DNA of 63,534 nt, counting the filler, from Octopus bimaculoides (taxonomy: Eukaryota), in NCBI RefSeq assembly GCF_001194135.2. It is 9 parts of 8 records of this genome, joined end to end, with 100 filler letters (N's around TTAATTAATTAA, not from the genome) between each part and the next. Parts side by side here need not be neighbours in the genome. Positions count along the whole stretch, not along the records: positions 1 to 19,064 come from NC_068987.1; 8 more parts are not named here. One strand, 5' to 3'. Below are positions 1,729 to 18,048 of the stretch, one piece after another; within the stretch, counting starts at the first letter, position 1; every line of letters begins with the position of its first letter. A model generated the notes under the pieces. That model made no database searches and had not been told where the DNA came from. It worked only from the letters and a program-made list of their open reading frames with translations. The position numbers and the translations under genes are program-made.

Positions 1729-1862
1729 CCATATACAATAGAACGGTTTGTGTTAGTACAGCATCGATAATACATTTCATAGGACTGATCACTTTCACAG
1801 AAAGAAACAACTTTAGAATCGTTTTTGAGTGGAGAAGAACATTTTGAGCATAAAGACAGGTC
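1729..1862 (-). CDS. ATRAID: ATRAID/APR-3 orthologue, coding exon 2 (134 nt, phase 0 in, phase 2 out)
   Basis: Acceptor ttattttgtttatttccag|GAC and donor TGG|gtgagt. It translates to DLSLCSKCSSPLKNDSKVVSFCESDQSYEMYYRCCTNTNRSIVYG. The Cys spacing matches human ATRAID as recalled (ICTQCPGSVQNLSKVAFYCKTTRELMLHARCCLNQKGTILG). It is below the ORF-track length cutoff. Confidence 0.85.
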
Positions 1863-2727: not shown

Positions 2728-2897
2728 TATATATGACGGGCTTCTTTCAGTTTCCGTCTACCAAATCCACTCACAAGGCTTTCGTCGGCCTGAGGCTATA
2801 GTAGAAGACACTTGCCCAAGGTGCCACGCAGTGGGACTGAACCCGGAACCACGTGGTTGGTAAGCAAGCTACTTACCACACAGCCACTCCTGCACCT
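2530..2897 (-). mobile_element. Full-length tRNA-derived CORE-like SINE (family A) with an internal (TA)n(CA)n microsatellite
   Basis: Minus strand: aggtgcaggagtggctgtgtggtaagtagcttgc...ggttccgggttcagtccc (A and B boxes), then gtggcaccttgggcaagtgtc (resembles the CORE domain), and an AAAAGAGT tail. It probably belongs to the octopus OR/OK-type SINEs; the family name is not verified. Confidence 0.85.
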
Positions 2898-2929: not shown

Positions 2930-3525
2930 TTATTGACCCCCCAAAAAGATGAAAGGTAGTCAACTAGTCAACATTAGTGGAATTTGAACTCAAAAGTAAA
3001 GTCAGTAGCAATACCACTGAGCTGTCCATTATGGTAACGATTTGGCCAGCTTGCAGCCTTACATAATGATGAAGATGATGATGATAATCCTTTCAAGTTT
3101 GTAGCAGAAAACCAGTAGTTTTTGAGGGAAGGGTAAAGTCAATATACTGACTCCAATACTTGACTGGTACTTCATTTATCGACCCCAAAAACGATGAAAG
3201 GCAAAGTCGACCCCGGTGGAATTTGAACTCAGAGCATAAAGACGAACAAAATGTCACTAAGCCTTTTGCCTGGCATGCGACTCGTTCTGCCAGCTCGCCA
3301 CCTTAATAATAATATTCATAATAATAATAATCCATTCTACGATAGGCACAGGGCCTGAAGTTTGGTGGGAGGGGGCTAGTCAATTACATGAACCCCAGTG
3401 TTACACTGGTACTTAATTCACTGACCCCCAAAAGGATGAAAAGCAAAGTTGACCTCGGTGGAATTTGAACTCAGAATGTAACGACAGGCAAAATACCCAC
3501 AAGCTAATGATTTTGCCAGTTCACC
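2930..3525 (-). mobile_element. Three stacked copies of tRNA-derived SINE family B
   Basis: Repeated reverse complement of ggtgagctggcagaatcgttagc...gagttcaaattccaccgaggtcgactttgcctttcatcc...gtcgataaa..aagtaccag, separated by (AAT)n-like runs. Confidence 0.8.
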
Positions 3526-5743: not shown

Positions 5744-5925
5744 AGACGTAGGAGTGGCTGTGTGGTAAGTAGCTTGCTTACGAACCACATGGTTCCGGGT
5801 TGAGTCCCACTGTGTGGCATCTTGGGCAAGTATCTTCTACTATAGCGTCGGGCTGACCAAAGCCTTGTGAGTGGATTTGGTAGACAGAAACTGAAAGAAG
5901 CCCGTCGTATATATATATATGTATG

Positions 5926-6399: not shown

Positions 6400-6804
6400 G
6401 CTTGCGAAGACTTATTGGGGCAAGCAAAAGCGAAACTGTGATGGCACCTGTGCCCAGTGTCGCCTTTCTGGCACTTGTGCCCGCGGCATATGTAAGGACT
6501 TTCAAGCGAGATCGTTGCCAGCGCCCCTGGACTGGCTCTTGTGTGGGTGGCACATAAAATACACCATTTTGAGCATGGCCGTTGCCAGTACTGCCTGACT
6601 GGCCTTCGTGCTGGTGGCACGTAAAAAGCACCCACTACACTCTCTGAGTGGTTGGCGTTAGGAAGGGCATCCAGCTGTAGAAACTCTGCCAAATCAGATT
6701 GGAGCCTGGTGTAGCCATCTGGTTTCACCAGTCCTCAGTCAAATCGTCCAACCCATGCTAGCATGGAAAGCAGACGTTAAACTACAATGATGATGATGAT
6801 GATG
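6400..6804 (+). mobile_element. RTE-type retroposon 3' region with a (GAT)n tail; other plus-strand copies at 9390-9775 and 13575-14122
   Basis: gtggcacgtaaaaagcacccactacactctc..agtggttggcgttaggaagggcatccagctgtagaaac...aacccatgctagcatggaaagcagacgttaaac...gatgatgatgatg is near-identical across the copies. Confidence 0.8.
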
Positions 6805-7939: not shown

Positions 7940-8160
7940 TTCTTTATTGCCCACAAGGGGCTAAACATAGAGGGGACAAACAAGGACAGACAAAGGGATT
8001 AAGTCGATTACATTGACTCCAGTGCGTAACTGATAATTAATTTAGCAACCCCGAAAGGCAAAGTTGACCTCAGAGGAATTTGAACTCAGAACGTAACGGC
8101 AGACGAAATACTGAGAAGCATTTCGCCTGGCATGTTGACGATTCTGCCAGCTCACCACCT
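7940..8160 (-). mobile_element. SINE family B copy with the long tail variant
   Basis: Reverse complement of ggtgagctggcagaatcgtc...gagttcaaattcctctgaggtcaactttgcc...taatccctttgtctgtccttgtttgtcccctctatgtttagccccttgtggg. Confidence 0.8.
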
Positions 8161-9780: not shown

Positions 9781-10089
9781 ATGCGTGGCACCTTGGGTAA
9801 GTGTCTTCTACTATAGCCTCGGGCCAACCAAAGCCTTGTGAGTGGATTTGGTAGATGGAAACCGAAAGAAGTCCGTCGTATACATGTATGTATATAAACG
9901 CCGGAGTTTTAATGGTGGCAGCTGATGAAGGGGATGTTTCTATGTGGCCTGCTTGTTTGTTGCACCTTGTTTATCATTTTTGTCCTTGCTCTTTTGCCAC
10001 GTCATGTACCCAGTTATGTATCTATATGTACATGTGGATGAACGTATATACACACATGTACATATATATGCATATACTCATATATTGTT

Positions 10090-11255: not shown

Positions 11256-12049
11256 GTTGTGGTGTGTGTGTGTGTGTGTAGCAGTACCGTCCCAAATGTG
11301 GATGCAGCTTTGCATTGTGAATCACACCACTTCTGTCTGTCTCTAATATCAAATAAAATGAATCGACATGTATAAAGTCATCTGTCGGAAACATAGTTTT
11401 ATGAATGAGTAATCTACAAACAGAAAATAATAGTAAACAGAATTAGAAGAAATTATCTATCCGTGTCGGCCTAAAATGACGTTTGCCAAAAAGATTACCA
11501 AAAAAAAAAAATAAATAATGTCCATGGCCAGAAATGTCGAAATACTCTTCTTTTCGCAACATAGGAATATATCCAAAGTCAAGAACTTCAGAAAAGATGT
11601 GGCCTATTAGTTTGATCTCTCTGTATAGAATTAGTTACGATTGATGTTAAACCCTTACGTATACAGGACAGAAGTTGACTCGAAGATGTGAGTGAATAAA
11701 AGAGAGGGAGGAGGTTCTTACATGAGAAAAAAAAAACAGTATGTTAAATAAGGATACAAAGACTGTGTAAAAGAATACCTAAATATTTTTTCATGTGTGC
11801 AAAGTAAGTATAAGCTTGTACATAAAAAAGGGAACAACAATTTCAAGTTTTGGGTCAGTGTTTTTCCTTCATCTCCAAATAATAAAAAAGAGTCCTTGCC
11901 TCTGTTTCCATTAACACACAAGCACGCAATAAGAAGATCTGGCTGTGGCTGAAGAAAAACGAACATGACACGAAGATTTTTATGTCACAAAACTATATTT
12001 TGTTGAGATTAAATGATAAATAAATAAAATCGGAAGGTAGTTGTTTTAC

Positions 12050-12124
12050 CTGGTCTGAATGAACTTGTAGGATAACAACAAACAAGTACAATCCGACAAA
12101 AATCTTTCTTTCGACAGGCTCCAT
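12050..12124 (-). CDS. ATRAID: ATRAID/APR-3 orthologue, coding exon 1 (signal peptide, 25 codons, phase 0)
   Basis: ccacgATGG start context. It translates to MEPVERKIFVGLYLFVVILQVHSDQ, a hydrophobic signal-peptide-like sequence, and ends at donor CAG|gtaaaa. The phase matches the exon at 1729-1862. Confidence 0.7.
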
Positions 12125-12297
12125 CGTGGTAACCAAAGACAATAACCAGTGTCTCGAACAGAAGAAACTCCTTTCTTATATTAAAAGCCCATGTTTCTAT
12201 AAAAGTTTGTCAAGACTGAGTAAGAACTTATTTATAAATAAAGTCACGAGATGGTAATCACATGATTTACAAAACACCGTTAGTAAAGCGATATTTG

Positions 12298-12367
12298 ATT
12301 GGTTCTCACTGTTGTCGACTCCACTAATTGCTGACGAGTTAACATAGTGAGGTGTTGTCATGACAAC
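12298..12367. promoter_or_regulatory. Promoter core: inverted CCAAT (ATTGG, 12298-12302) and a perfect palindromic RFX X-box GTTGTCATGACAAC (12354-12367)
   Basis: The 14-bp palindrome fits the X-box consensus (GTTGCCATGGCAAC-like). It lies in unique, repeat-free sequence between two divergent genes, one of which encodes a ciliary protein. Confidence 0.7.
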
Positions 12368-12403
12368 GTGTATACACACTTCTAACGACAATTTCAATAG
12401 CAG
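12368..12403 (+). other. TEKT2: Predicted non-coding first exon of TEKT2 (3' end only; TSS unknown)
   Basis: Donor CAG|gtaaaa at 12403/12404 lies just downstream of the X-box. The TEKT2 coding exon begins with an acceptor 24 nt before its ATG, so an upstream UTR exon is expected. Confidence 0.45.
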
Positions 12404-14774
12404 GTAAAATACTTTTTGTCTTAAAAATTCTTCGATTTCAATTCAATGATAACTGTGAAAACTAAATTTTATCAATGTTTTTCTGTTCGCCTTTTTTATA
12501 TATTTATAAATATTACGGAAAAATCCTTATTTTATTCTCTTGTCAATTGTCAATGTCGCTCGCTTGCATTTAAACGATATGCATTTATAGTAAAAAATAA
12601 AAAATAAAATAAAATAAAAAAAAACTAGGAGTTGGTAATATAAAGAATCTTCCCTAAATTATCTCGAAAAATAAATGATATTGCTATTAATATCATATAT
12701 TCTCATTTCTTTTCCTTTAGTCATTCGGTAAAATATTTTTCAGTCGCATTTCAAATTCAATTTTTTTTCTTTTTTTTAATAGTTAAGATTTAAAAAATTG
12801 CATATATAAATTTTTCCTTTCAATAATTCGGTCTGATTTTCTGAATCCGAAGATAACATTCTCAGAAAATATTTTTAAATCCCCAAATAGACAAATATAT
12901 ATATTTTAGCTTCCTCCTTATCAGCAGTAGCTGCATTACTACTCTAGATCCAATAAGCGAATCTGTATGTGGTTGCTCTCCCTGCATGAAATAGCAGCCA
13001 AATCTCCCTTCCCTTACAGCCTATTATCGTTATGAAAAAAAAAAAGAAAAGAAACAATGATAAGGAAGGGCACATTAAATAATGTAGTCATAGACATACA
13101 ACAGGCTTCTAAAAATATTACATTACAGCTAAAAAGTTTCGATTGGGTATTTATTGGTGAGAGAGAGAGACAGAGCATTTCAAGGAAAGAAAGTGAAAGT
13201 AACAGAGAGGGTTAAAGACAGTAACATCATGATCATCATCATCATTATTACCATCAGCATCATCATCATTATTGTTAACATCATCATCATCATCATCCTC
13301 AAAACCATTACAGTCTTGTTTTACAATACAAACTATTCCACAAAGTTATCAAACCCAAGAAGTAGAAAATTTTTATTTCATTCATTTATTTCTTTATACA
13401 TTTATTTTGCATTCATTATTTATATTCACTCCTTGGATAAGCATCTTCTGAGGGAAATTGGGCAGATGGAAACTATACAAAACACACTAACAAAAATCAC
13501 TTAAATAACCTTTTTCATGTTTATTTTAATTGTAAAAAGGATTAATCACTAATTATATTACATTACATTTGGGCTTCACAGAGGCAATAACAAGAGACTG
13601 AGACCTTTGGAGATATGCTATGATTGAGAAGATCCGGCAAGTAAGTGAGATTGCAGCCATGGCCAATGCCAGTGTTGCATAACCAGCCCATTAAAAGTAC
13701 CCTTGAATCATCAGGTGATATGCTGTGCTTGAGAAGACCTGTTGAGTTAAGTGAAATTGAAATCGTAGTCATGGTTAGTGCCGCCTGACTGGCACCCATG
13801 CTGGTGGCATGTAATAAGCACCATTTGAACATGGGATAATGCAGTGCTGGCTGAGTGGCTCCCTATGTTGATGTCACATAAAAAGCACAATCTGGATGTG
13901 GTCGATGCCAGTGTGCCCTGACTGACTCTCATGCAGGTGGCACGTAAAAAGCACCCACTACACTCTTGGAGTGGTTGGCGTTAGGAAGGGCATCCAGCTG
14001 TAGAAACCTTGCCAGATCAGATCGGAGCCAGTTGCAGCCTACTGGCTTGCCAGTCCTCAATCAAACCATCCAACCCATGCCAGCATGGAAAACTGATGTT
14101 AAACGATGATGATGATGATGATATATATAATACACACACACACACACACACACANNNNNNNNNNNNNNNNNNNNNNNNNNNNNNNNNNNNNNNNNNNNNN
14201 NNNNNNNNNNNNNNNNNNNNNNNNNNNNNNNNNNNNNNNNNNNNNNNNNNNNNNNNNNNNNNNNNNNNNNNNNNNNNNNNNNNNNNNNNNNNNNNNNNNN
14301 NNNNNNNAGAAATATATGTATCACTAAAAGTGACAAATGGCACTAATCAGCACTAGTATTGCTAGAAATAAGAGCTACAGTTATTGAGGTGTTTTGATTC
14401 TTATTTCTAGCAATACTGGTGCTGATTAATGCCTTTGTCATACAGGGTTGGCCAGAAGTCACCCGACAGTAAATCAAAATTCCATAAATACTCCCTGTAA
14501 TTCTGTATTGACTTGAATGGAAAAGTGTGTCGCTCAAGAAGGACTTCAGTTTGAAAAGTTTTCATGATGTTTCATATTTAGATGCTTTTATTAAATTCAT
14601 TCAGTTGTTAAATATAAATAATTCTTGGAATTAAGTGGTTTTGATTTACTGTCAGGTGACATTTGGCCAACCCTCTGTGAGTGTATGTGTGCGTGTACAT
14701 TAGTGGAAAATCACCAGGAGGGCAGTATACCTGCTAGTACTTTTAATGAAAACAATTGAACAGAAGGAAAAGAA

Positions 14775-14812
<38 letters not shown>

Positions 14813-15694
14813 CATTGCAAGGAAAGAAAGCGAAAATAACTGTGAGAGGGAAAAAACAAAATGTATTTAATGAAATAAGAGGGGAGGGGATACAAATGAA
14901 GTGTGTGAGTGAAAAAGAGACAAAGAGCGAAAGGAGTAAGACATTAATAAATCATTTGCTTTCTTTTATTTATTAGTTACATACTCATAACAAATTTATA
15001 AGCAGGTTTTTTTATAATAGGAAAATCATTTGAAAACAAGTGTTAATACTTCCAAAATGGACTGCTAATGATTGTAGCAGACATGATGGCAGAGTTTCAT
15101 TTATCTTGTATTTGTTAGTTTTGTTATTATAAATGTGTAGGAAGCCTAACAGGCCCTCCCAGGTTGATTACATCAATGAGGTTTAATTAATTATGTAAAA
15201 GAAAACATGATGAATATAGATGGATAAGCTGACAGGTTGCCAGACTACAAGTAGCATGTTAAATCCTGTCAGCAGCAGTGCAGTGAACAAATAAGACTGA
15301 GATGTTAAACTGTGAACTGGTGATAATCCTCTGTGTAATCACTTACCTCATTAGAAATAGATATCACAACACCTTCAAATCACAATGGATTATCTGAAGT
15401 GTGTGTGCACGTGTGTGTGTATGTGTATATGCTTGAGTTTGTGGTAGACCAAGGAAAATGTAGCGGGACAGTTGGAGGAGATTGGGAGGGTTGGCTTGAG
15501 GAGGGAAGATGCCCAAAACAGGGCAAGATGATGTGAGGGTGGTTGCTATGGCATTGAGTTTGCTCCGGCCACTCCCATTAACAGGGACAAAACCCGGATT
15601 CAAAACACTGTATGTTGATGATGATATGTGTATATACATATATGTATGTGTGTGAGTGTGTGTGTTTATATATATATATATATATATTAATAAT

Positions 15695-15930
15695 AATAAT
15701 ATGACAACAAAAAAGTGAATGAGACCTCAATATTATGTAAAATAGAGGAATTTATCTATAAATATAATATGTGACAATGAGTTGGTTGTCATAATAAAAC
15801 TCAGAGTTTTGGATGCTGGGGCTGAAGTCTGCTCAGGCATCTCATCAGTTATTAAGACAAAACGCTATGAAAAAAAAAAACGTTGAATAAAGGGAAATTA
15901 CTCCAATAGGCATGTTGAAAGTAATACATC
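15695..15930 (-). mobile_element. Penelope-like element terminal repeat fragment
   Basis: gagacctcaatattatgtaaaatagaggaattt... is shared with 62280-62376, and the fragment contains a hammerhead-like fold, as reported for PLE termini. Confidence 0.55.
15786..15860 (-). ncRNA. Type I hammerhead ribozyme-like motif (G12 mutated to A in this copy)
   Basis: Minus strand: TTGTC-T-TAATAA / CTGATGA / GATGC..GCATC-C / AAAA / CTC-T-GAG / T,T / TTATTA-T-GACAA. Helix I has 6+5 bp, the CUGAUGA core is intact, helix II has a 5-bp base, and helix III is short and near-palindromic. Confidence 0.6.
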
Positions 15931-16229
15931 ATTCATAGAATCCACATATACACACGCATACATGTATGCACACACACACACACACACACATGTATGTATA
16001 TATATCTATATACACACACACATATATATANNNNNNNNNNNNNNNNNNNNNNNNNNNNNNNNNNNNNNNNNNNNNNNNNNNNNNNNNNNNNNNNNNNNNN
16101 NNNNNNNNNNNNNNNNNNNNNNNNNNNNNNNNNNNNNNNNNNNNNNNNNNNNNNNNNNNNNNNNNNNNNNNNNNNNNNNNNNNNNNNNNNNNNNNNNNNN
16201 NNNNNNNNNNNNNNNNATATATATATGCT

Positions 16230-16559
16230 GAGACCTCCTTCGTCATGACTGACCATGGGATTGCACCTAGAAAGTTACCCTTCCAGGCACAAGTCTGAGC
16301 AAGGTTGTTTATGGAAGACCAGTAGTCGCCCATGCATACCAGCCTCCTCTCTTCACACCACCAATGTCATCCAAGGGAAAGGCAAAGGCTGATACAGCTT
16401 GGCACCTGTAATATCGCAACTCATTTCTACAGCTGAATGAACTGGAGCAACATGAAATAGAGTGTCTTGCTCAAGAACACAACACGCAGCCCAGTCTGGG
16501 ATTCGAACTCACAACCTCACGATCATAAGCTTGATGCTCTAGCCACTGAATCATGCGCC

Positions 16560-16563
<4 letters not shown>
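16230..16563 (-). mobile_element. tRNA-derived SINE family D; related heads or bodies at 24205-24450 (+), 44190-44393 (-), 49380-49580 (-) and 53450-53535 (-)
   Basis: Minus strand: gtgaaggcgcatgattcagtggctagagc...gagttcgaatccc...gtgttcttgagcaagacact (A and B boxes plus a CORE-like motif). Confidence 0.75.
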
Positions 16564-16639
<76 letters not shown>

Positions 16640-17279
16640 TATATATATATATATATATTTGATTGATTAATGAGAGAGAAGGAAGATGGAAGATATGAGA
16701 ATGTTCATTAACCACTACACTTGTTTTGACCCATCTAGCATTGATCCCTCCTGGGTGGGATACTTAACAACTGGTTTAGAAGTATCCGTTTGTGTAGATG
16801 TGTCTCTTCAGGTGATTACAGTATGTATCTCATTAAAATAATGACTGTTCCACAGGATATCTTCTTGGTTTGTGTATAGAAAAGCAGCAAATTAAGGAAT
16901 TCAGCTTCATTTTTACAGAAGATCAATAATAAATAACAAATACAAAAAGAAACAAATACACAGTACAGCGAAAAAGTATTAAATACACATATAAATAGGC
17001 AAATAACAATAGATGGATAATGTGTTAATCCACTATAGCTGTTTCCAATGAAGGGTCTGGTTAGATAAATCTCCCCCTGTACTTGTTTTTTAAAGTCTGG
17101 TACTTACCCTGTCAGTATCTGTTGCTTAACAGCTAAGTTGCAGAAATATAAACAAACCAACAGTGGTTATCAAGCTGTGGGGTGTTGGTAACAAACACAA
17201 GCACATACACACACACAAACACATGTGCACACACACACACACACACACACACATACATACACACACACATACACATACA

Positions 17280-17435
17280 CACACATGCTTTGACAGCTTC
17301 CACCTACCAAATTCACTTACAAGGCATTGGTTGTGCTGGGACTTTAGTAGAAAATAACTAGCCCAAGGTGCCTCACAATGTGATTGAACCTGAAATCACT
17401 TGGCTGCAAAGCATGGTTCTCACCACACAGCCATG
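17280..17435 (-). mobile_element. Degenerate SINE family A, left part
   Basis: Reverse complement of ggctgtgtggtgagaaccatgctttgcagccaagtgatttcaggttcaatcac..gaggcaccttgggctagt...ccaatgccttgtaagtgaatttggtaggtggaagctg. Confidence 0.7.
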
Positions 17436-17637
17436 TCTAGACTATTCATTCATATATTCACATGATAGAAACAGTTTCTTGAAAGCATTGTCTAATTTTA
17501 ATTTAGTCTATAACTATCTTGTATTGATAATATGTCATGAATTTTTGACTAGAATTTCTTTAATTGATTATAAATGTCTCATTTTCTTTATTAATTCTGT
17601 CTTTCCATTGCAGGAGTAGTGCAGTTAAATTTTCAAG

Positions 17638-18048
17638 ATGGCCACTGAACTTCACAAAGTTCATTACCAACCAAAGGATTGGTTTACCAACAACTATAGC
17701 ATCTCTACAAATTCTGAACGAGAGCAAAAGGCCTCCACTAACTGTCGACAAGAAGGGCGATACCTACGCAATGAAACCTATGCTCAGACAAAATGGGACG
17801 AGTACCACAATAATATCAGGCTCGGTGATAGAGTAGACCAAATTAGAAAATGGAAAGAAATACTTGAGAAAGTGCTACAGGATCTGGATGAAGAAATTGG
17901 AGATTTATCTGTATCCAAAGATTTGGCGGAACAGCAACTTGAGGACATGAATCTTGCAACTGATGTTAACGTAGAAAATTTGACCCTTCGAGAGGGCCAC
18001 TATGGTATTGACCTTACTGAAGATGACCCTGAGCTTGAGCTTAGAAAG
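17638..18048 (+). CDS. TEKT2: Tektin-2 (tektin B1), first coding exon (137 codons, phase 0; exon starts at 17614)
   Basis: MATELHKVHYQPKDWFTNNYSISTNSEREQKASTNCRQEGRYLRNETYAQTKWDEYHNNIRLGDRVDQIRKWKEILEK...LREGHYGIDLTEDDPELELRK aligns with human TEKT2 as recalled (W.TNSY.LSTNAE.QR..S..IRQE.R.LRNET..QT.WDE..N..RL..RID....WKE.L). Acceptor ctttccattgcag|G at 17613/17614; donor AAG|gtttgt at 18048/18049. Confidence 0.93.

What the first reader, a model, noticed from the sequence alone, without database searches (positions are those of the whole stretch)
12050..12405. Candidate bidirectional promoter linking ATRAID and the ciliary gene TEKT2, with a perfect RFX X-box
Seen in sequence: the ATRAID ATG (12124, minus) is about 230 bp from a perfect palindrome GTTGTCATGACAAC (12354-12367). 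An inverted CCAAT lies between them, and a plus-strand donor follows at 12403/12404. Established: RFX factors bind X-boxes near the TSS of ciliary genes, and tektins are axonemal proteins. Inference: one compact, repeat-free promoter drives both genes, so ATRAID might share RFX-dependent or sperm/cilia-biased expression. As I recall, the two human genes have other neighbours, so this pairing may be specific to molluscs or cephalopods.
Basis: partly seen in the sequence, partly recalled or inferred. Interest (0 to 1): 0.75.

Follow-up and report, generated by a model that had tools for sequence, protein, structure and literature searches.

The report
Shared ATRAID / tektin-2 X-box promoter
A short unique stretch between two back-to-back genes (ATRAID and the ciliary/sperm-tail gene tektin-2) carries an RFX-type X-box, and the same layout recurs in other molluscs' and a brachiopod's DNA, so it is very probably a real, ancient but ordinary kind of shared promoter.

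Summary
These are the minus-strand ATG at 12124, ATTGG at 12298-12302, the palindrome GTTGTCATGACAAC at 12354-12367 and the donor CAG|GT at 12403/12404.

The plus-strand gene is a tektin-2 orthologue. The minus-strand gene is ATRAID-like.

The decisive evidence is comparative. Eight other animal loci have a signal-peptide exon pointing left, then CCAAT box(es), then an X-box-like site, then a GT donor 18-76 nt later, then an intron and an acceptor just before the tektin-2 ATG. One of these is Lingula anatina, where the neighbour is annotated with the Pfam domain EGF_ATRAID_C. Three of five spliced tektin-2 transcript contigs from unidentified relatives begin inside the right half of such an X-box.

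The tektin-2 start site therefore most likely lies at about 12361, with a non-coding first exon of about 43 nt spliced over 5.2 kb.

- The site fits the relaxed X-box consensus, not the strictest one.
- The gene pairing is not specific to molluscs.

Whether ATRAID is RFX-dependent is untested. No transcript data exist for this species. A second, proximal promoter cannot be excluded.

Verdict: real; a new member of a known kind.

The parts
12050..12124 (-). ATRAID-like exon 1: ATG plus a signal-peptide-like 25 codons (MEPVERKIFVGLYLFVVILQVHSDQ), phase 0, followed by GT at 12049-12048
   Evidence: Read directly. Equivalent short hydrophobic first exons sit at the same place in L001, L003, L004, L005, L006 and L018. 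That it is a signal peptide is inferred from its composition.
1729..1862 (-). ATRAID-like exon 2 (DLSLCSKCSSPLKNDSKVVSFCESDQSYEMYYRCCTNTNRSIVYG), with acceptor cag| in phase with exon 1 and donor G|GTGAGT. The intron between exons 1 and 2 is about 10.2 kb.
   Evidence: The exon was read. An HMM built from exon-2 peptides of relatives, without the window, hits only this ORF among 591 window ORFs, with E 2.3e-6.
12257..12267 (.). ATCACATGATT, an E-box/M-box-like element identical in the second cephalopod-like locus L001
   Evidence: Exact 11-mer, collinear with the other conserved blocks. Its function is inferred only.
12298..12302 (-). Inverted CCAAT box (ATTGG; conserved context ATTGGTT)
   Evidence: CCAAT is present in all 9 promoter intervals, 17 sites against 5.8 expected.
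12354..12367 (.). X-box-type palindrome GTTGTCATGACAAC, a candidate RFX dimer site
   Evidence: A positionally equivalent site exists in L001 (GTTGTCATAGAAAC), L003, L004, L005, L006, L018, L019 and L021.
12361..12403 (+). Putative non-coding first exon of tektin-2. The start is approximate and inferred; the end is the CAG|GT donor.
   Evidence: Donor read. Donors lie 18-76 nt after the X-box in all nine loci, and there are no ATGs in 451 nt of these segments against 8.7 expected. Transcript contigs of relatives begin at (A)TAGCAAC.
12404..17613 (+). Putative tektin-2 intron 1 (5,210 nt), full of microsatellites, N gaps and dispersed repeats. Its acceptor is ...tctgtctttccattgcag|.
   Evidence: Equivalent introns measure 274 nt to 7.8 kb in relatives.
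17614..18048 (+). Tektin-2 first coding exon: 24 nt of 5'UTR, ATG at 17638, 137 codons, donor AAG|GTTTGT
   Evidence: Pfam Tektin PF03148 on the homologues. Best solved-structure match is Tektin-2, 120.8 bits against 38.6 for Tektin-3. A homologue is named tektin-2-like [Lingula anatina].

Best explanation
Window 12125-12403 is a compact divergent (bidirectional) promoter region.

On the plus strand it is the core promoter of tektin-2. An RFX-type X-box at 12354-12367, helped by a CCAAT box (presumably bound by NF-Y) at 12298-12302, sits at the transcription start. Transcription most likely begins within or just after the X-box spacer, at about 12361. That gives a non-coding first exon of about 43 nt. 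The exon is spliced from the donor at 12403/12404 over a 5.2-kb repeat-filled intron to the acceptor at 17613/17614, 24 nt before the tektin-2 ATG.

On the minus strand, ATRAID starts somewhere between the X-box and its ATG at 12124.

Shown here: the motifs, the gene identities, the head-to-head arrangement, and the conservation of this anatomy in other animals.

Inferred: RFX binding, the exact start sites, the splice, and any sharing of RFX control by ATRAID.
For: **1. Gene identities**
- Tektin (PF03148), specifically Tektin-2 (named Lingula hit).
- ATRAID-like exon 2.

**2. A second cephalopod-like contig, L001 (tektin exon 72% identical), has the same order and spacing**
- a signal-peptide exon on the minus strand
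- ATCACATGATT
- ATTGGTT
- the X-box GTTGTCATAGAAAC, plus a second one, GTTGCCGATAACAAC
- a donor AAG|GTAAGT
- a 7.8-kb intron
- an acceptor 41 nt before the ATG

**3. The same arrangement occurs in other loci**
- ATRAID-like gene, CCAAT, X-box-like site, donor, intron, tektin-2 ATG are found in L003, L004, L005, L006-8, L018 and L021.
- It is also in Lingula anatina L019, whose neighbour is an annotated 227-aa protein with Pfam EGF_ATRAID_C.

**4. Motif statistics**
- RGYAAC half-sites: 20 in the nine intervals against 4.2 expected from the rest of the same loci.
- The 15-mer TGTTTRGATAGCAAC is invariant in five otherwise 54%-identical promoters.

**5. Transcript evidence from relatives**
- Spliced tektin-2 contigs from relatives, probably metatranscriptome-derived, start with CTAGCAAC, TAGCAAC and TGCATAGCAAC. 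A fourth has GACAAC at nt 9-14.
- Their 5'UTRs are 71-119 nt, compared with about 67 nt predicted here.

**6. The putative first exons look like 5'UTR**
- No ATG in 451 nt, against 8.7 expected.

**7. Local sequence context**
- The promoter interval is unique in the window, whereas the 200-280 bp upstream of the coding exon is a dispersed-repeat copy.

**8. Literature**
- Tekt2 is listed as an Rfx2 target in Xenopus (PMC3889689).
- RFX3 enhances FOXJ1-induced TEKT2 expression in human airway cells (PMC3710277).
Against: - There is no transcript, CAGE or binding data for this species. The start sites and the 12403-to-17614 splice are inferred.
- The X-box misses the strict consensus by one base per half-site.
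- In most non-cephalopod loci only the right half-site and the left GTT are canonical. The full published consensus is met only in the window, L001 and L003.
- If transcription began upstream of 12360, the ATG inside the X-box would open an out-of-frame upstream ORF that overlaps the tektin start.
- L001 also has a strict X-box (ATAACCTTGGTAAC, 9867-9880) only 253 bp before its tektin ATG. It heads a block that is 84% identical between L001 and L002, as conserved as the coding exon. A proximal promoter may therefore exist in that lineage.
- The window has a weak half-site, AGAAAC, at 17467-17472.
- Most related contigs come from unidentified organisms, and some are probably close relatives of one another.
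- Some motif patterns were chosen after looking at the data.
It was cross-checked only indirectly, because it hits the Pfam-annotated Lingula gene collinearly.
Confidence: 0.75

Rival explanations
1. There are two adjacent but functionally separate promoters. The X-box serves only tektin-2. ATRAID is driven by its own proximal elements: E-box/M-box-like in cephalopods, twin CCGGAA ETS-type sites in other lineages. On this reading the linkage persists only because the interval is too short to break without damage.
For: - Distinct ATRAID-proximal motifs exist. Twin CCGGAA sites occur in L004, L005, L006 and L018, with single sites in L003 and L021 (10 against 0.28 expected).
- ATCACATGATT is shared by the window and L001.
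- In vertebrates ATRAID is known as a broadly acting membrane protein needed for bisphosphonate action, not as a ciliary gene (bioRxiv 10.1101/338350).
- No paper in the library holds both ATRAID and TEKT2.
Against: - In L004, L005, L006 and L018 a second X-box-like site lies only 72-86 bp from the putative ATRAID ATG. A similar site is present in L021, where the ATRAID start was not located.
- X-boxes act in either orientation.
- The pairing has been kept across very distant lineages, which suggests a shared constraint.
Confidence: 0.45
2. Tektin-2 in this species is transcribed mainly or also from a proximal promoter just upstream of the coding exon, at about 17.4-17.6 kb. The 12.36-kb X-box would then belong to ATRAID alone or to a minor alternative first exon.
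For: - L001 has a strict X-box 253 bp before its tektin ATG, at the head of a block 84% identical to L002.
- L022 has a strict X-box 112 bp before the ATG and no obvious intron.
- The window has TCACATGATAGAAAC at 17458-17472.
Against: - The window has no consensus X-box near 17.6 kb.
- 17357-17433 is a dispersed-repeat copy and 17191-17285 is a microsatellite.
- A strong acceptor (12 of 15 pyrimidines, then CAG) lies 24 nt before the ATG, as in all relatives.
- No block is convincingly conserved between the window and L001/L002 in this region.
Confidence: 0.2
3. The palindrome is a chance match or binds a different factor. For example, it contains TGTCA/TGACA, the half-sites of TALE-homeodomain factors. 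On this reading it has no RFX role.
For: - Perfect 14-nt palindromes are common in the window (97).
- The relaxed consensus match reaches the observed count in 9 of 200 shuffles.
- The strict consensus is not met.
Against: - What is conserved across loci is the RFX half-site (A/G)(G/A)(C/A)AAC with GTT 8-9 nt upstream, not TGTCA.
- The site recurs at the same position in nine loci.
- Transcripts in relatives start at the site.
Confidence: 0.05

Closest known systems
X-box promoters of ciliary genes bound by RFX factors (C. elegans DAF-19, Drosophila dRfx and vertebrate RFX1-3 targets, including Xenopus tekt2)
   Same: - An imperfect or perfect inverted repeat fitting GYTRYY-N1-3-RRHRAC (PMC2375033).
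- It lies close to the start of an axonemal gene.
- It is conserved in sequence and position among orthologues.
- Tekt2 is reported as an Rfx2 target (PMC3889689).
- RFX sites close to the TSS are the rule in C. elegans (PMC7498320).
   Different: - Binding is untested here.
- The site deviates from the strictest consensus.
- In relatives the transcripts appear to start inside the motif itself.
- The promoter is separated from the coding exon by a 5.2-kb intron.
Bidirectional (divergent) promoters of animal genes, typically with CCAAT/NF-Y and ETS/GABPA sites
   Same: - Head-to-head genes with 230 bp between one gene's ATG and the other's presumed start.
- CCAAT in all nine loci, and CCGGAA in six of nine.
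   Different: - The window is AT-rich (about 33% GC), not a CpG island.
- The window itself has no CCGGAA.
- Co-expression is unknown.
- One partner is a tissue-restricted ciliary gene.
Ancient conserved microsynteny held together by shared cis-regulation (own knowledge)
   Same: The same two unrelated genes are kept adjacent and divergent in cephalopod-like contigs, other unidentified invertebrate contigs and a brachiopod.
   Different: - This is a promoter-sharing pair less than 0.5 kb apart, not a bystander gene carrying distal enhancers.
- The pairing was not found within 10 kb in Fasciola (L020) or L022.
- By my recollection the pairing is absent in human. That was not tested here.

Membership tests
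RFX X-box motif | Inverted repeat fitting the restricted consensus GYTRYY N1-3 RRHRAC | tested here: met
   GTTGTC-AT-GACAAC at 12354-12367. The consensus is from PMC2375033.
RFX X-box motif | Fit to the least degenerate consensus RTNRCC N1-3 RGYAAC | tested here: not met
   No match in the window. There is one mismatch in each half: T for C at position 5, and A for G at position 10.
RFX X-box motif | Located at or near the start of a ciliary gene, and conserved in position among orthologues | tested here: met
   An equivalent site lies 18-76 nt before the first-exon donor in nine loci. Half-sites are enriched, 20 against 4.2 expected. Transcripts of relatives begin in the motif. The window's own TSS is not mapped.
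RFX X-box motif | Bound by an RFX protein, with expression that depends on RFX | not testable with these tools
   Needs ChIP, DAP-seq, EMSA or a reporter assay.
Bidirectional promoter | Two genes head-to-head on opposite strands | tested here: met
   ATRAID-like exon 1 is on the minus strand (12124-12050). The tektin-2 donor and coding exon are on the plus strand.
Bidirectional promoter | Start sites less than 1 kb apart | tested here: inconclusive
   The ATRAID ATG is 230 bp from the X-box, so the criterion is met if the tektin-2 TSS is at the X-box. Neither TSS is mapped in this species.
Bidirectional promoter | Coordinated expression of the two genes | not testable with these tools
   No expression data are available.
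Tektin-2 | Tektin domain, and closest to Tektin-2 among the paralogues | tested here: met
   PF03148 on the homologues. 120.8 bits to bovine Tektin-2 (7rro_B0) against at most 38.6 to Tektin-1, -3, -4 and -5. A homologue is named 'tektin-2-like [Lingula anatina]'.
ATRAID | N-terminal signal peptide followed by the Cys pattern C-x2-C-x13-C-x10-CC | tested here: met
   Exon 1 is hydrophobic. Exon 2 matches human ATRAID residues 34-73. It is the only window ORF hit by a profile built from relatives, E 2.3e-6.
ATRAID | C-terminal EGF-like domain (Pfam EGF_ATRAID_C) and a transmembrane helix | not testable with these tools
   These exons lie beyond the window's left edge. They are present in the syntenic genes of L003, L006-8, L021 and Lingula. 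PF27506 was not reported by the local Pfam scan.

The most novel reading that the evidence does not exclude
The divergent ATRAID/tektin-2 pair, sharing an X-box plus CCAAT promoter, is an ancient regulatory unit at least as old as the mollusc-brachiopod ancestor. It would be kept together because ATRAID is itself an RFX-controlled gene expressed with the motile-cilium or sperm-flagellum programme in invertebrates. That would be an unrecognised link between a poorly understood membrane protein and cilia.
Probability: 0.25. Interest if true: 0.55.

Novelty: new member of a known kind. Interest (0 to 1): 0.4.

Why it matters
For genome annotation, the result places the tektin-2 start site 5.2 kb upstream of the coding exon. 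It also predicts a roughly 43-nt non-coding first exon that gene finders will miss.

For biology, it adds a clean, deeply conserved example of an X-box sitting at the start site of an axonemal gene. It also shows that ATRAID, described as 'conserved in chordates' (bioRxiv 10.1101/338350), exists in lophotrochozoans and has stayed glued head-to-head to tektin-2 there.

If ATRAID turns out to be co-regulated, that would hint at a cilia- or sperm-related role for a protein known mainly from bisphosphonate pharmacology. An X-box in front of TEKT2 is itself expected.

Tried and rejected
- Searching solved structures with human ATRAID found nothing.
- The local Pfam scan found no ATRAID family, only weak EGF hits.
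- Attempts to name the organisms behind the ENA and Logan contigs through accession searches in papers failed.
- No close octopod relative of the tektin exon is in the protein collection; the best hit is 72% identical.
- The look-up of the Varanus tektin-2 locus, meant as a vertebrate control, failed.
- The Fasciola locus (L020) and L022 show no ATRAID within 10 kb.
- None of the transcript contigs L009-L015 comes from a species with a genomic locus in hand. The first exon therefore could not be mapped directly onto a genome.
- Alignment of the window's proximal region with L001/L002 gave only chance-level matches.
- An automatic choice of acceptor sites was unreliable for L006 and L018, so the ATG-depletion test was restricted to first-exon segments.
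- The bacterial promoter/terminator, tRNA, Rfam and phage/plasmid tools were judged irrelevant and were not used.
Full report
**1. The observation**

Reading window 11700-12800 confirms each item.
- CAT at 12122-12124 is a minus-strand ATG. It opens 25 codons, MEPVERKIFVGLYLFVVILQVHSDQ, with a charged start and a hydrophobic core. The exon ends at 12050, and the next two bases (12049-12048) read GT on the minus strand.
- ATTGG lies at 12298-12302.
- GTTGTCATGACAAC lies at 12354-12367, 230 bp from the ATG.
- CAG|GTAAAA places a plus-strand donor at 12403/12404.

The palindrome is the only match in the window to GTHNYY-AT-RRNAAC. Shuffles gave a mean of 0.20 matches counting both strands, and 9 of 200 shuffles reached the observed count.

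Being a perfect palindrome is not special. The window holds 97 perfect 14-mers, mostly in (AT)n runs.

The site fits the restricted Drosophila consensus GYTRYY-N1-3-RRHRAC (PMC2375033). It misses the strictest consensus, RTNRCC-N1-3-RGYAAC, by one base per half. 'Perfect X-box' is therefore too strong.

The interval 12050-12405 is unique in the window and overlaps no repeat.

**2. The two genes**

The ORF at 17638-18048 encodes 137 residues.
- Its homologues carry Pfam Tektin.
- Against solved structures it scores 120.8 bits to bovine Tektin-2, and at most 38.6 bits to Tektin-1, -3, -4 or -5.
- A profile search returns 'tektin-2-like [Lingula anatina]' and other Tektin-2 names.
- An acceptor (tctgtctttccattgcag|) lies at 17613/17614, 24 nt before the ATG.

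On the minus strand, exon 1 is in phase with an exon at 1862-1729. That exon encodes DLSLCSKCSSPLKNDSKVVSFCESDQSYEMYYRCCTNTNRSIVYG.
- It matches residues 34-73 of human ATRAID, with the same cysteine spacing.
It was validated indirectly: it hits, exon by exon, a Lingula gene whose product carries Pfam EGF_ATRAID_C.
- A profile of exon-2 peptides from relatives, built without the window, hits only this ORF among 591 window ORFs, with E 2.3e-6.
- The rest of ATRAID lies beyond the window's left edge.

**3. Related loci**

The tektin exon retrieved genomic contigs from other animals.

L001 has a tektin exon 72% identical to the window's and large introns, and I take it to be another cephalopod. 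It repeats the window's layout:
- a minus-strand ATG with a signal-peptide exon ending in GTAAG
- ATCACATGATT, identical to window 12257-12267
- ATTGGTT
- two X-boxes, GTTGCCGATAACAAC and GTTGTCATAGAAAC
- a donor AAG|GTAAGT 57 nt later
- a 7.8-kb intron
- an acceptor 41 nt before the tektin ATG

More distant loci, with tektin exons 55-64% identical, carry ATRAID exons on the minus strand upstream of tektin-2. These are L003, L004, L006-8 and L021.

In those loci, and in L005 and L018, the interval has a common order:
- a putative signal-peptide exon (not located in L021)
- in L004, L005, L006 and L018, a pair of CCGGAA sites
- a first X-box-like site (for example ATGTCATAGCAAC)
- ATTGG and CCAAT
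- a second site, TGTTTRGATAGCAAC
- a GT donor 18-75 nt later

The second site is invariant in five promoters that are otherwise 54% identical.

In Lingula anatina (NCBI assembly, L019), a 227-aa gene with Pfam EGF_ATRAID_C lies head-to-head with tektin-2-like. Its interval reads GTTACCATGACAC, then ATTGG-N19-CCAAT, then TGTTTGCCTGACAAC, then CAG|GTAAGT. The whole unit is present twice.

**4. Statistics**

Nine promoter intervals were tested, 2,716 nt in total. The rest of the same loci served as background.

| Motif | Observed | Expected | Coverage | P |
|---|---|---|---|---|
| RGYAAC half-sites | 20 | 4.2 | all nine loci | 2.5e-8 |
| CCAAT | 17 | 5.8 | all nine loci | 1.3e-4 |
| CCGGAA | 10 | 0.28 | six loci; not the cephalopod-like ones or Lingula | 5.5e-13 |

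The full published X-box consensus is met only in the window, L001 and L003. Elsewhere the right half and the left GTT are canonical, but the left half ends in purines.

These loci are not all independent, and some patterns were chosen after inspection. The P-values are therefore indicative only.

**5. Where tektin-2 transcription starts**

A metagenome scan returned five spliced tektin-2 contigs. Their exon junctions match the genomic exons of L003-L008, and they are probably metatranscriptome-derived.
- Three begin with CTAGCAAC, TAGCAAC and TGCATAGCAAC, which is the right half of the X-box.
- A fourth has GACAAC at nt 9-14.
- Their 5'UTRs are 71-119 nt.

By rough calculation, chance would place TAGCAAC in the first 11 nt of a contig about 3e-4 of the time.

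The segments from the half-site to the donor in the nine genomic loci total 451 nt. They contain no ATG, against 8.7 expected (P about 2e-4), as expected for a 5'UTR.

By analogy, the window's start lies at about 12361. That gives a first exon of about 43 nt and a 5'UTR of about 67 nt. A start upstream of 12360 would include the ATG in the X-box spacer and open an out-of-frame upstream ORF. This again favours a start at or after the spacer.

**6. Caveats**

- No transcript data exist for this species, and no close octopod was available.
- L001 has an additional strict X-box (ATAACCTTGGTAAC, 9867-9880) 253 bp before its tektin ATG. It heads a block 84% identical between L001 and L002, the same identity as the coding exon. 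A proximal promoter or intronic enhancer may exist in that lineage.
- The window has nothing comparable. Positions 17357-17433 are a dispersed-repeat copy and 17191-17285 are a microsatellite. No consensus X-box occurs there. Only a weak AGAAAC half-site lies at 17467-17472.

**7. Mechanism**

Most likely an RFX dimer at the X-box and NF-Y at the CCAAT box set the tektin-2 start. ATRAID is transcribed in the opposite direction from the same interval of less than 250 bp.

Whether ATRAID uses the X-box is open.
- For sharing: in L004, L005, L006 and L018 a first X-box-like site lies 72-86 bp from the putative ATRAID ATG, and the pairing is very old.
- Against sharing: each lineage has distinct ATRAID-proximal motifs, and ATRAID has no known ciliary role.

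**8. Comparison with what is known**

X-boxes at ciliary gene starts are well established (PMC2375033; PMC7498320). Tekt2 is reported as an Rfx2 target in Xenopus (PMC3889689). RFX3 enhances FOXJ1-induced TEKT2 in human cells (PMC3710277). The X-box at tektin-2 is therefore expected.

No paper in the library holds both ATRAID and TEKT2, or both ATRAID and 'bidirectional promoter'.

The pairing was not seen within 10 kb in Fasciola (L020) or L022. Its absence in human is my recollection only.

**9. Verdict**

It is a new member of a known kind, an X-box/CCAAT divergent promoter. The added result is that the ATRAID/tektin-2 pairing and its promoter grammar are conserved far beyond cephalopods.

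Confidence is 0.75 in the promoter model and about 0.25-0.3 that ATRAID is truly co-regulated. Interest is 0.4.

Noticed in passing
window 12257-12267; L001 2122-2132; window 17458-17466: ATCACATGATT is identical in the window and L001, at the same relative place between ATRAID and the CCAAT box. It resembles an M-box/E-box of the TCATGTGA type. A second TCACATGAT lies 170 bp before the tektin-2 ATG, directly followed by AGAAAC.
   Followed up: partly
L001 9867-10132; L002 294-567: The strict X-box ATAACCTTGGTAAC heads a roughly 260-nt block just upstream of the tektin-2 coding exon. The block is 84% identical between L001 and L002, as conserved as the exon itself. It could be a proximal promoter or an intronic enhancer in that lineage. 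L002 keeps only the AGTAAC half-site.
   Followed up: partly
L004 7343-7355; L005 8279-8290; L006 9275-9288; L018 231-243; single sites in L003 9297 and L021 9230: Twin CCGGAA (ETS-type) sites, CGGAACCGGAA, lie next to the putative ATRAID start in several non-cephalopod loci. They are absent from the window, L001 and Lingula.
   Followed up: partly
L003 9398/9422; L004 7450/7474; L019 9529/9553; L021 9274/9298: An ATTGG...CCAAT pair with exactly 24 bp start-to-start spacing recurs in four distant loci between the two X-box-like sites. The window has only the single ATTGG.
   Followed up: no
L019 6573-11092 and 11440-16989: In the Lingula assembly the whole ATRAID/tektin-2 unit, including its promoter motifs, is present twice with a 4.9-kb period. 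This is either a true tandem duplication or an assembly artefact. The first tektin model is partial (149 aa).
   Followed up: partly
L003, L004, L006-8, L019, L021 (ATRAID exons): ATRAID orthologues exist in a brachiopod and in several invertebrate contigs, although a paper describes ATRAID as 'conserved in chordates' (bioRxiv 10.1101/338350).
   Followed up: partly
window 12360-12362: The X-box spacer plus the next base forms an ATG. If it were transcribed, it would open an upstream ORF out of frame with, and overlapping, the tektin-2 start. The equivalent sites in relatives read ATA, not ATG.
   Followed up: partly
window 2810-2886, 5755-5831, 17357-17433; also 6576-6800 / 13899-14122; 3196-3277 / 3438-3519 / 8053-8134: Several dispersed short repeat families (SINE-like), many CA/TA microsatellites and four N gaps fill both long introns. 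One repeat copy sits 200-280 bp upstream of the tektin-2 coding exon.
   Followed up: partly
L005 302-7682: Retrotransposon ORFs (RT, RNase H, integrase, protease) occupy the region where ATRAID's downstream exons would be expected. This probably explains why only a candidate exon 1 was found there.
   Followed up: no
L022 9876-9889: A distant tektin-2 locus (exon 40% identical) has a strict X-box, GTTGCTATGGTAAC, 112 bp before the ATG and no ATRAID within 10 kb. The X-box is therefore older or more widespread than the gene pairing.
   Followed up: no
L004-L006, L018, L021, L014, L019 (TGTTTRG / TGTTTGC preceding the right half-site): The conserved left part, TGTTT(A/G)G, resembles a forkhead core (TRTTTRY, one mismatch). 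This raises the possibility of a composite FOXJ1/RFX element.
   Followed up: no
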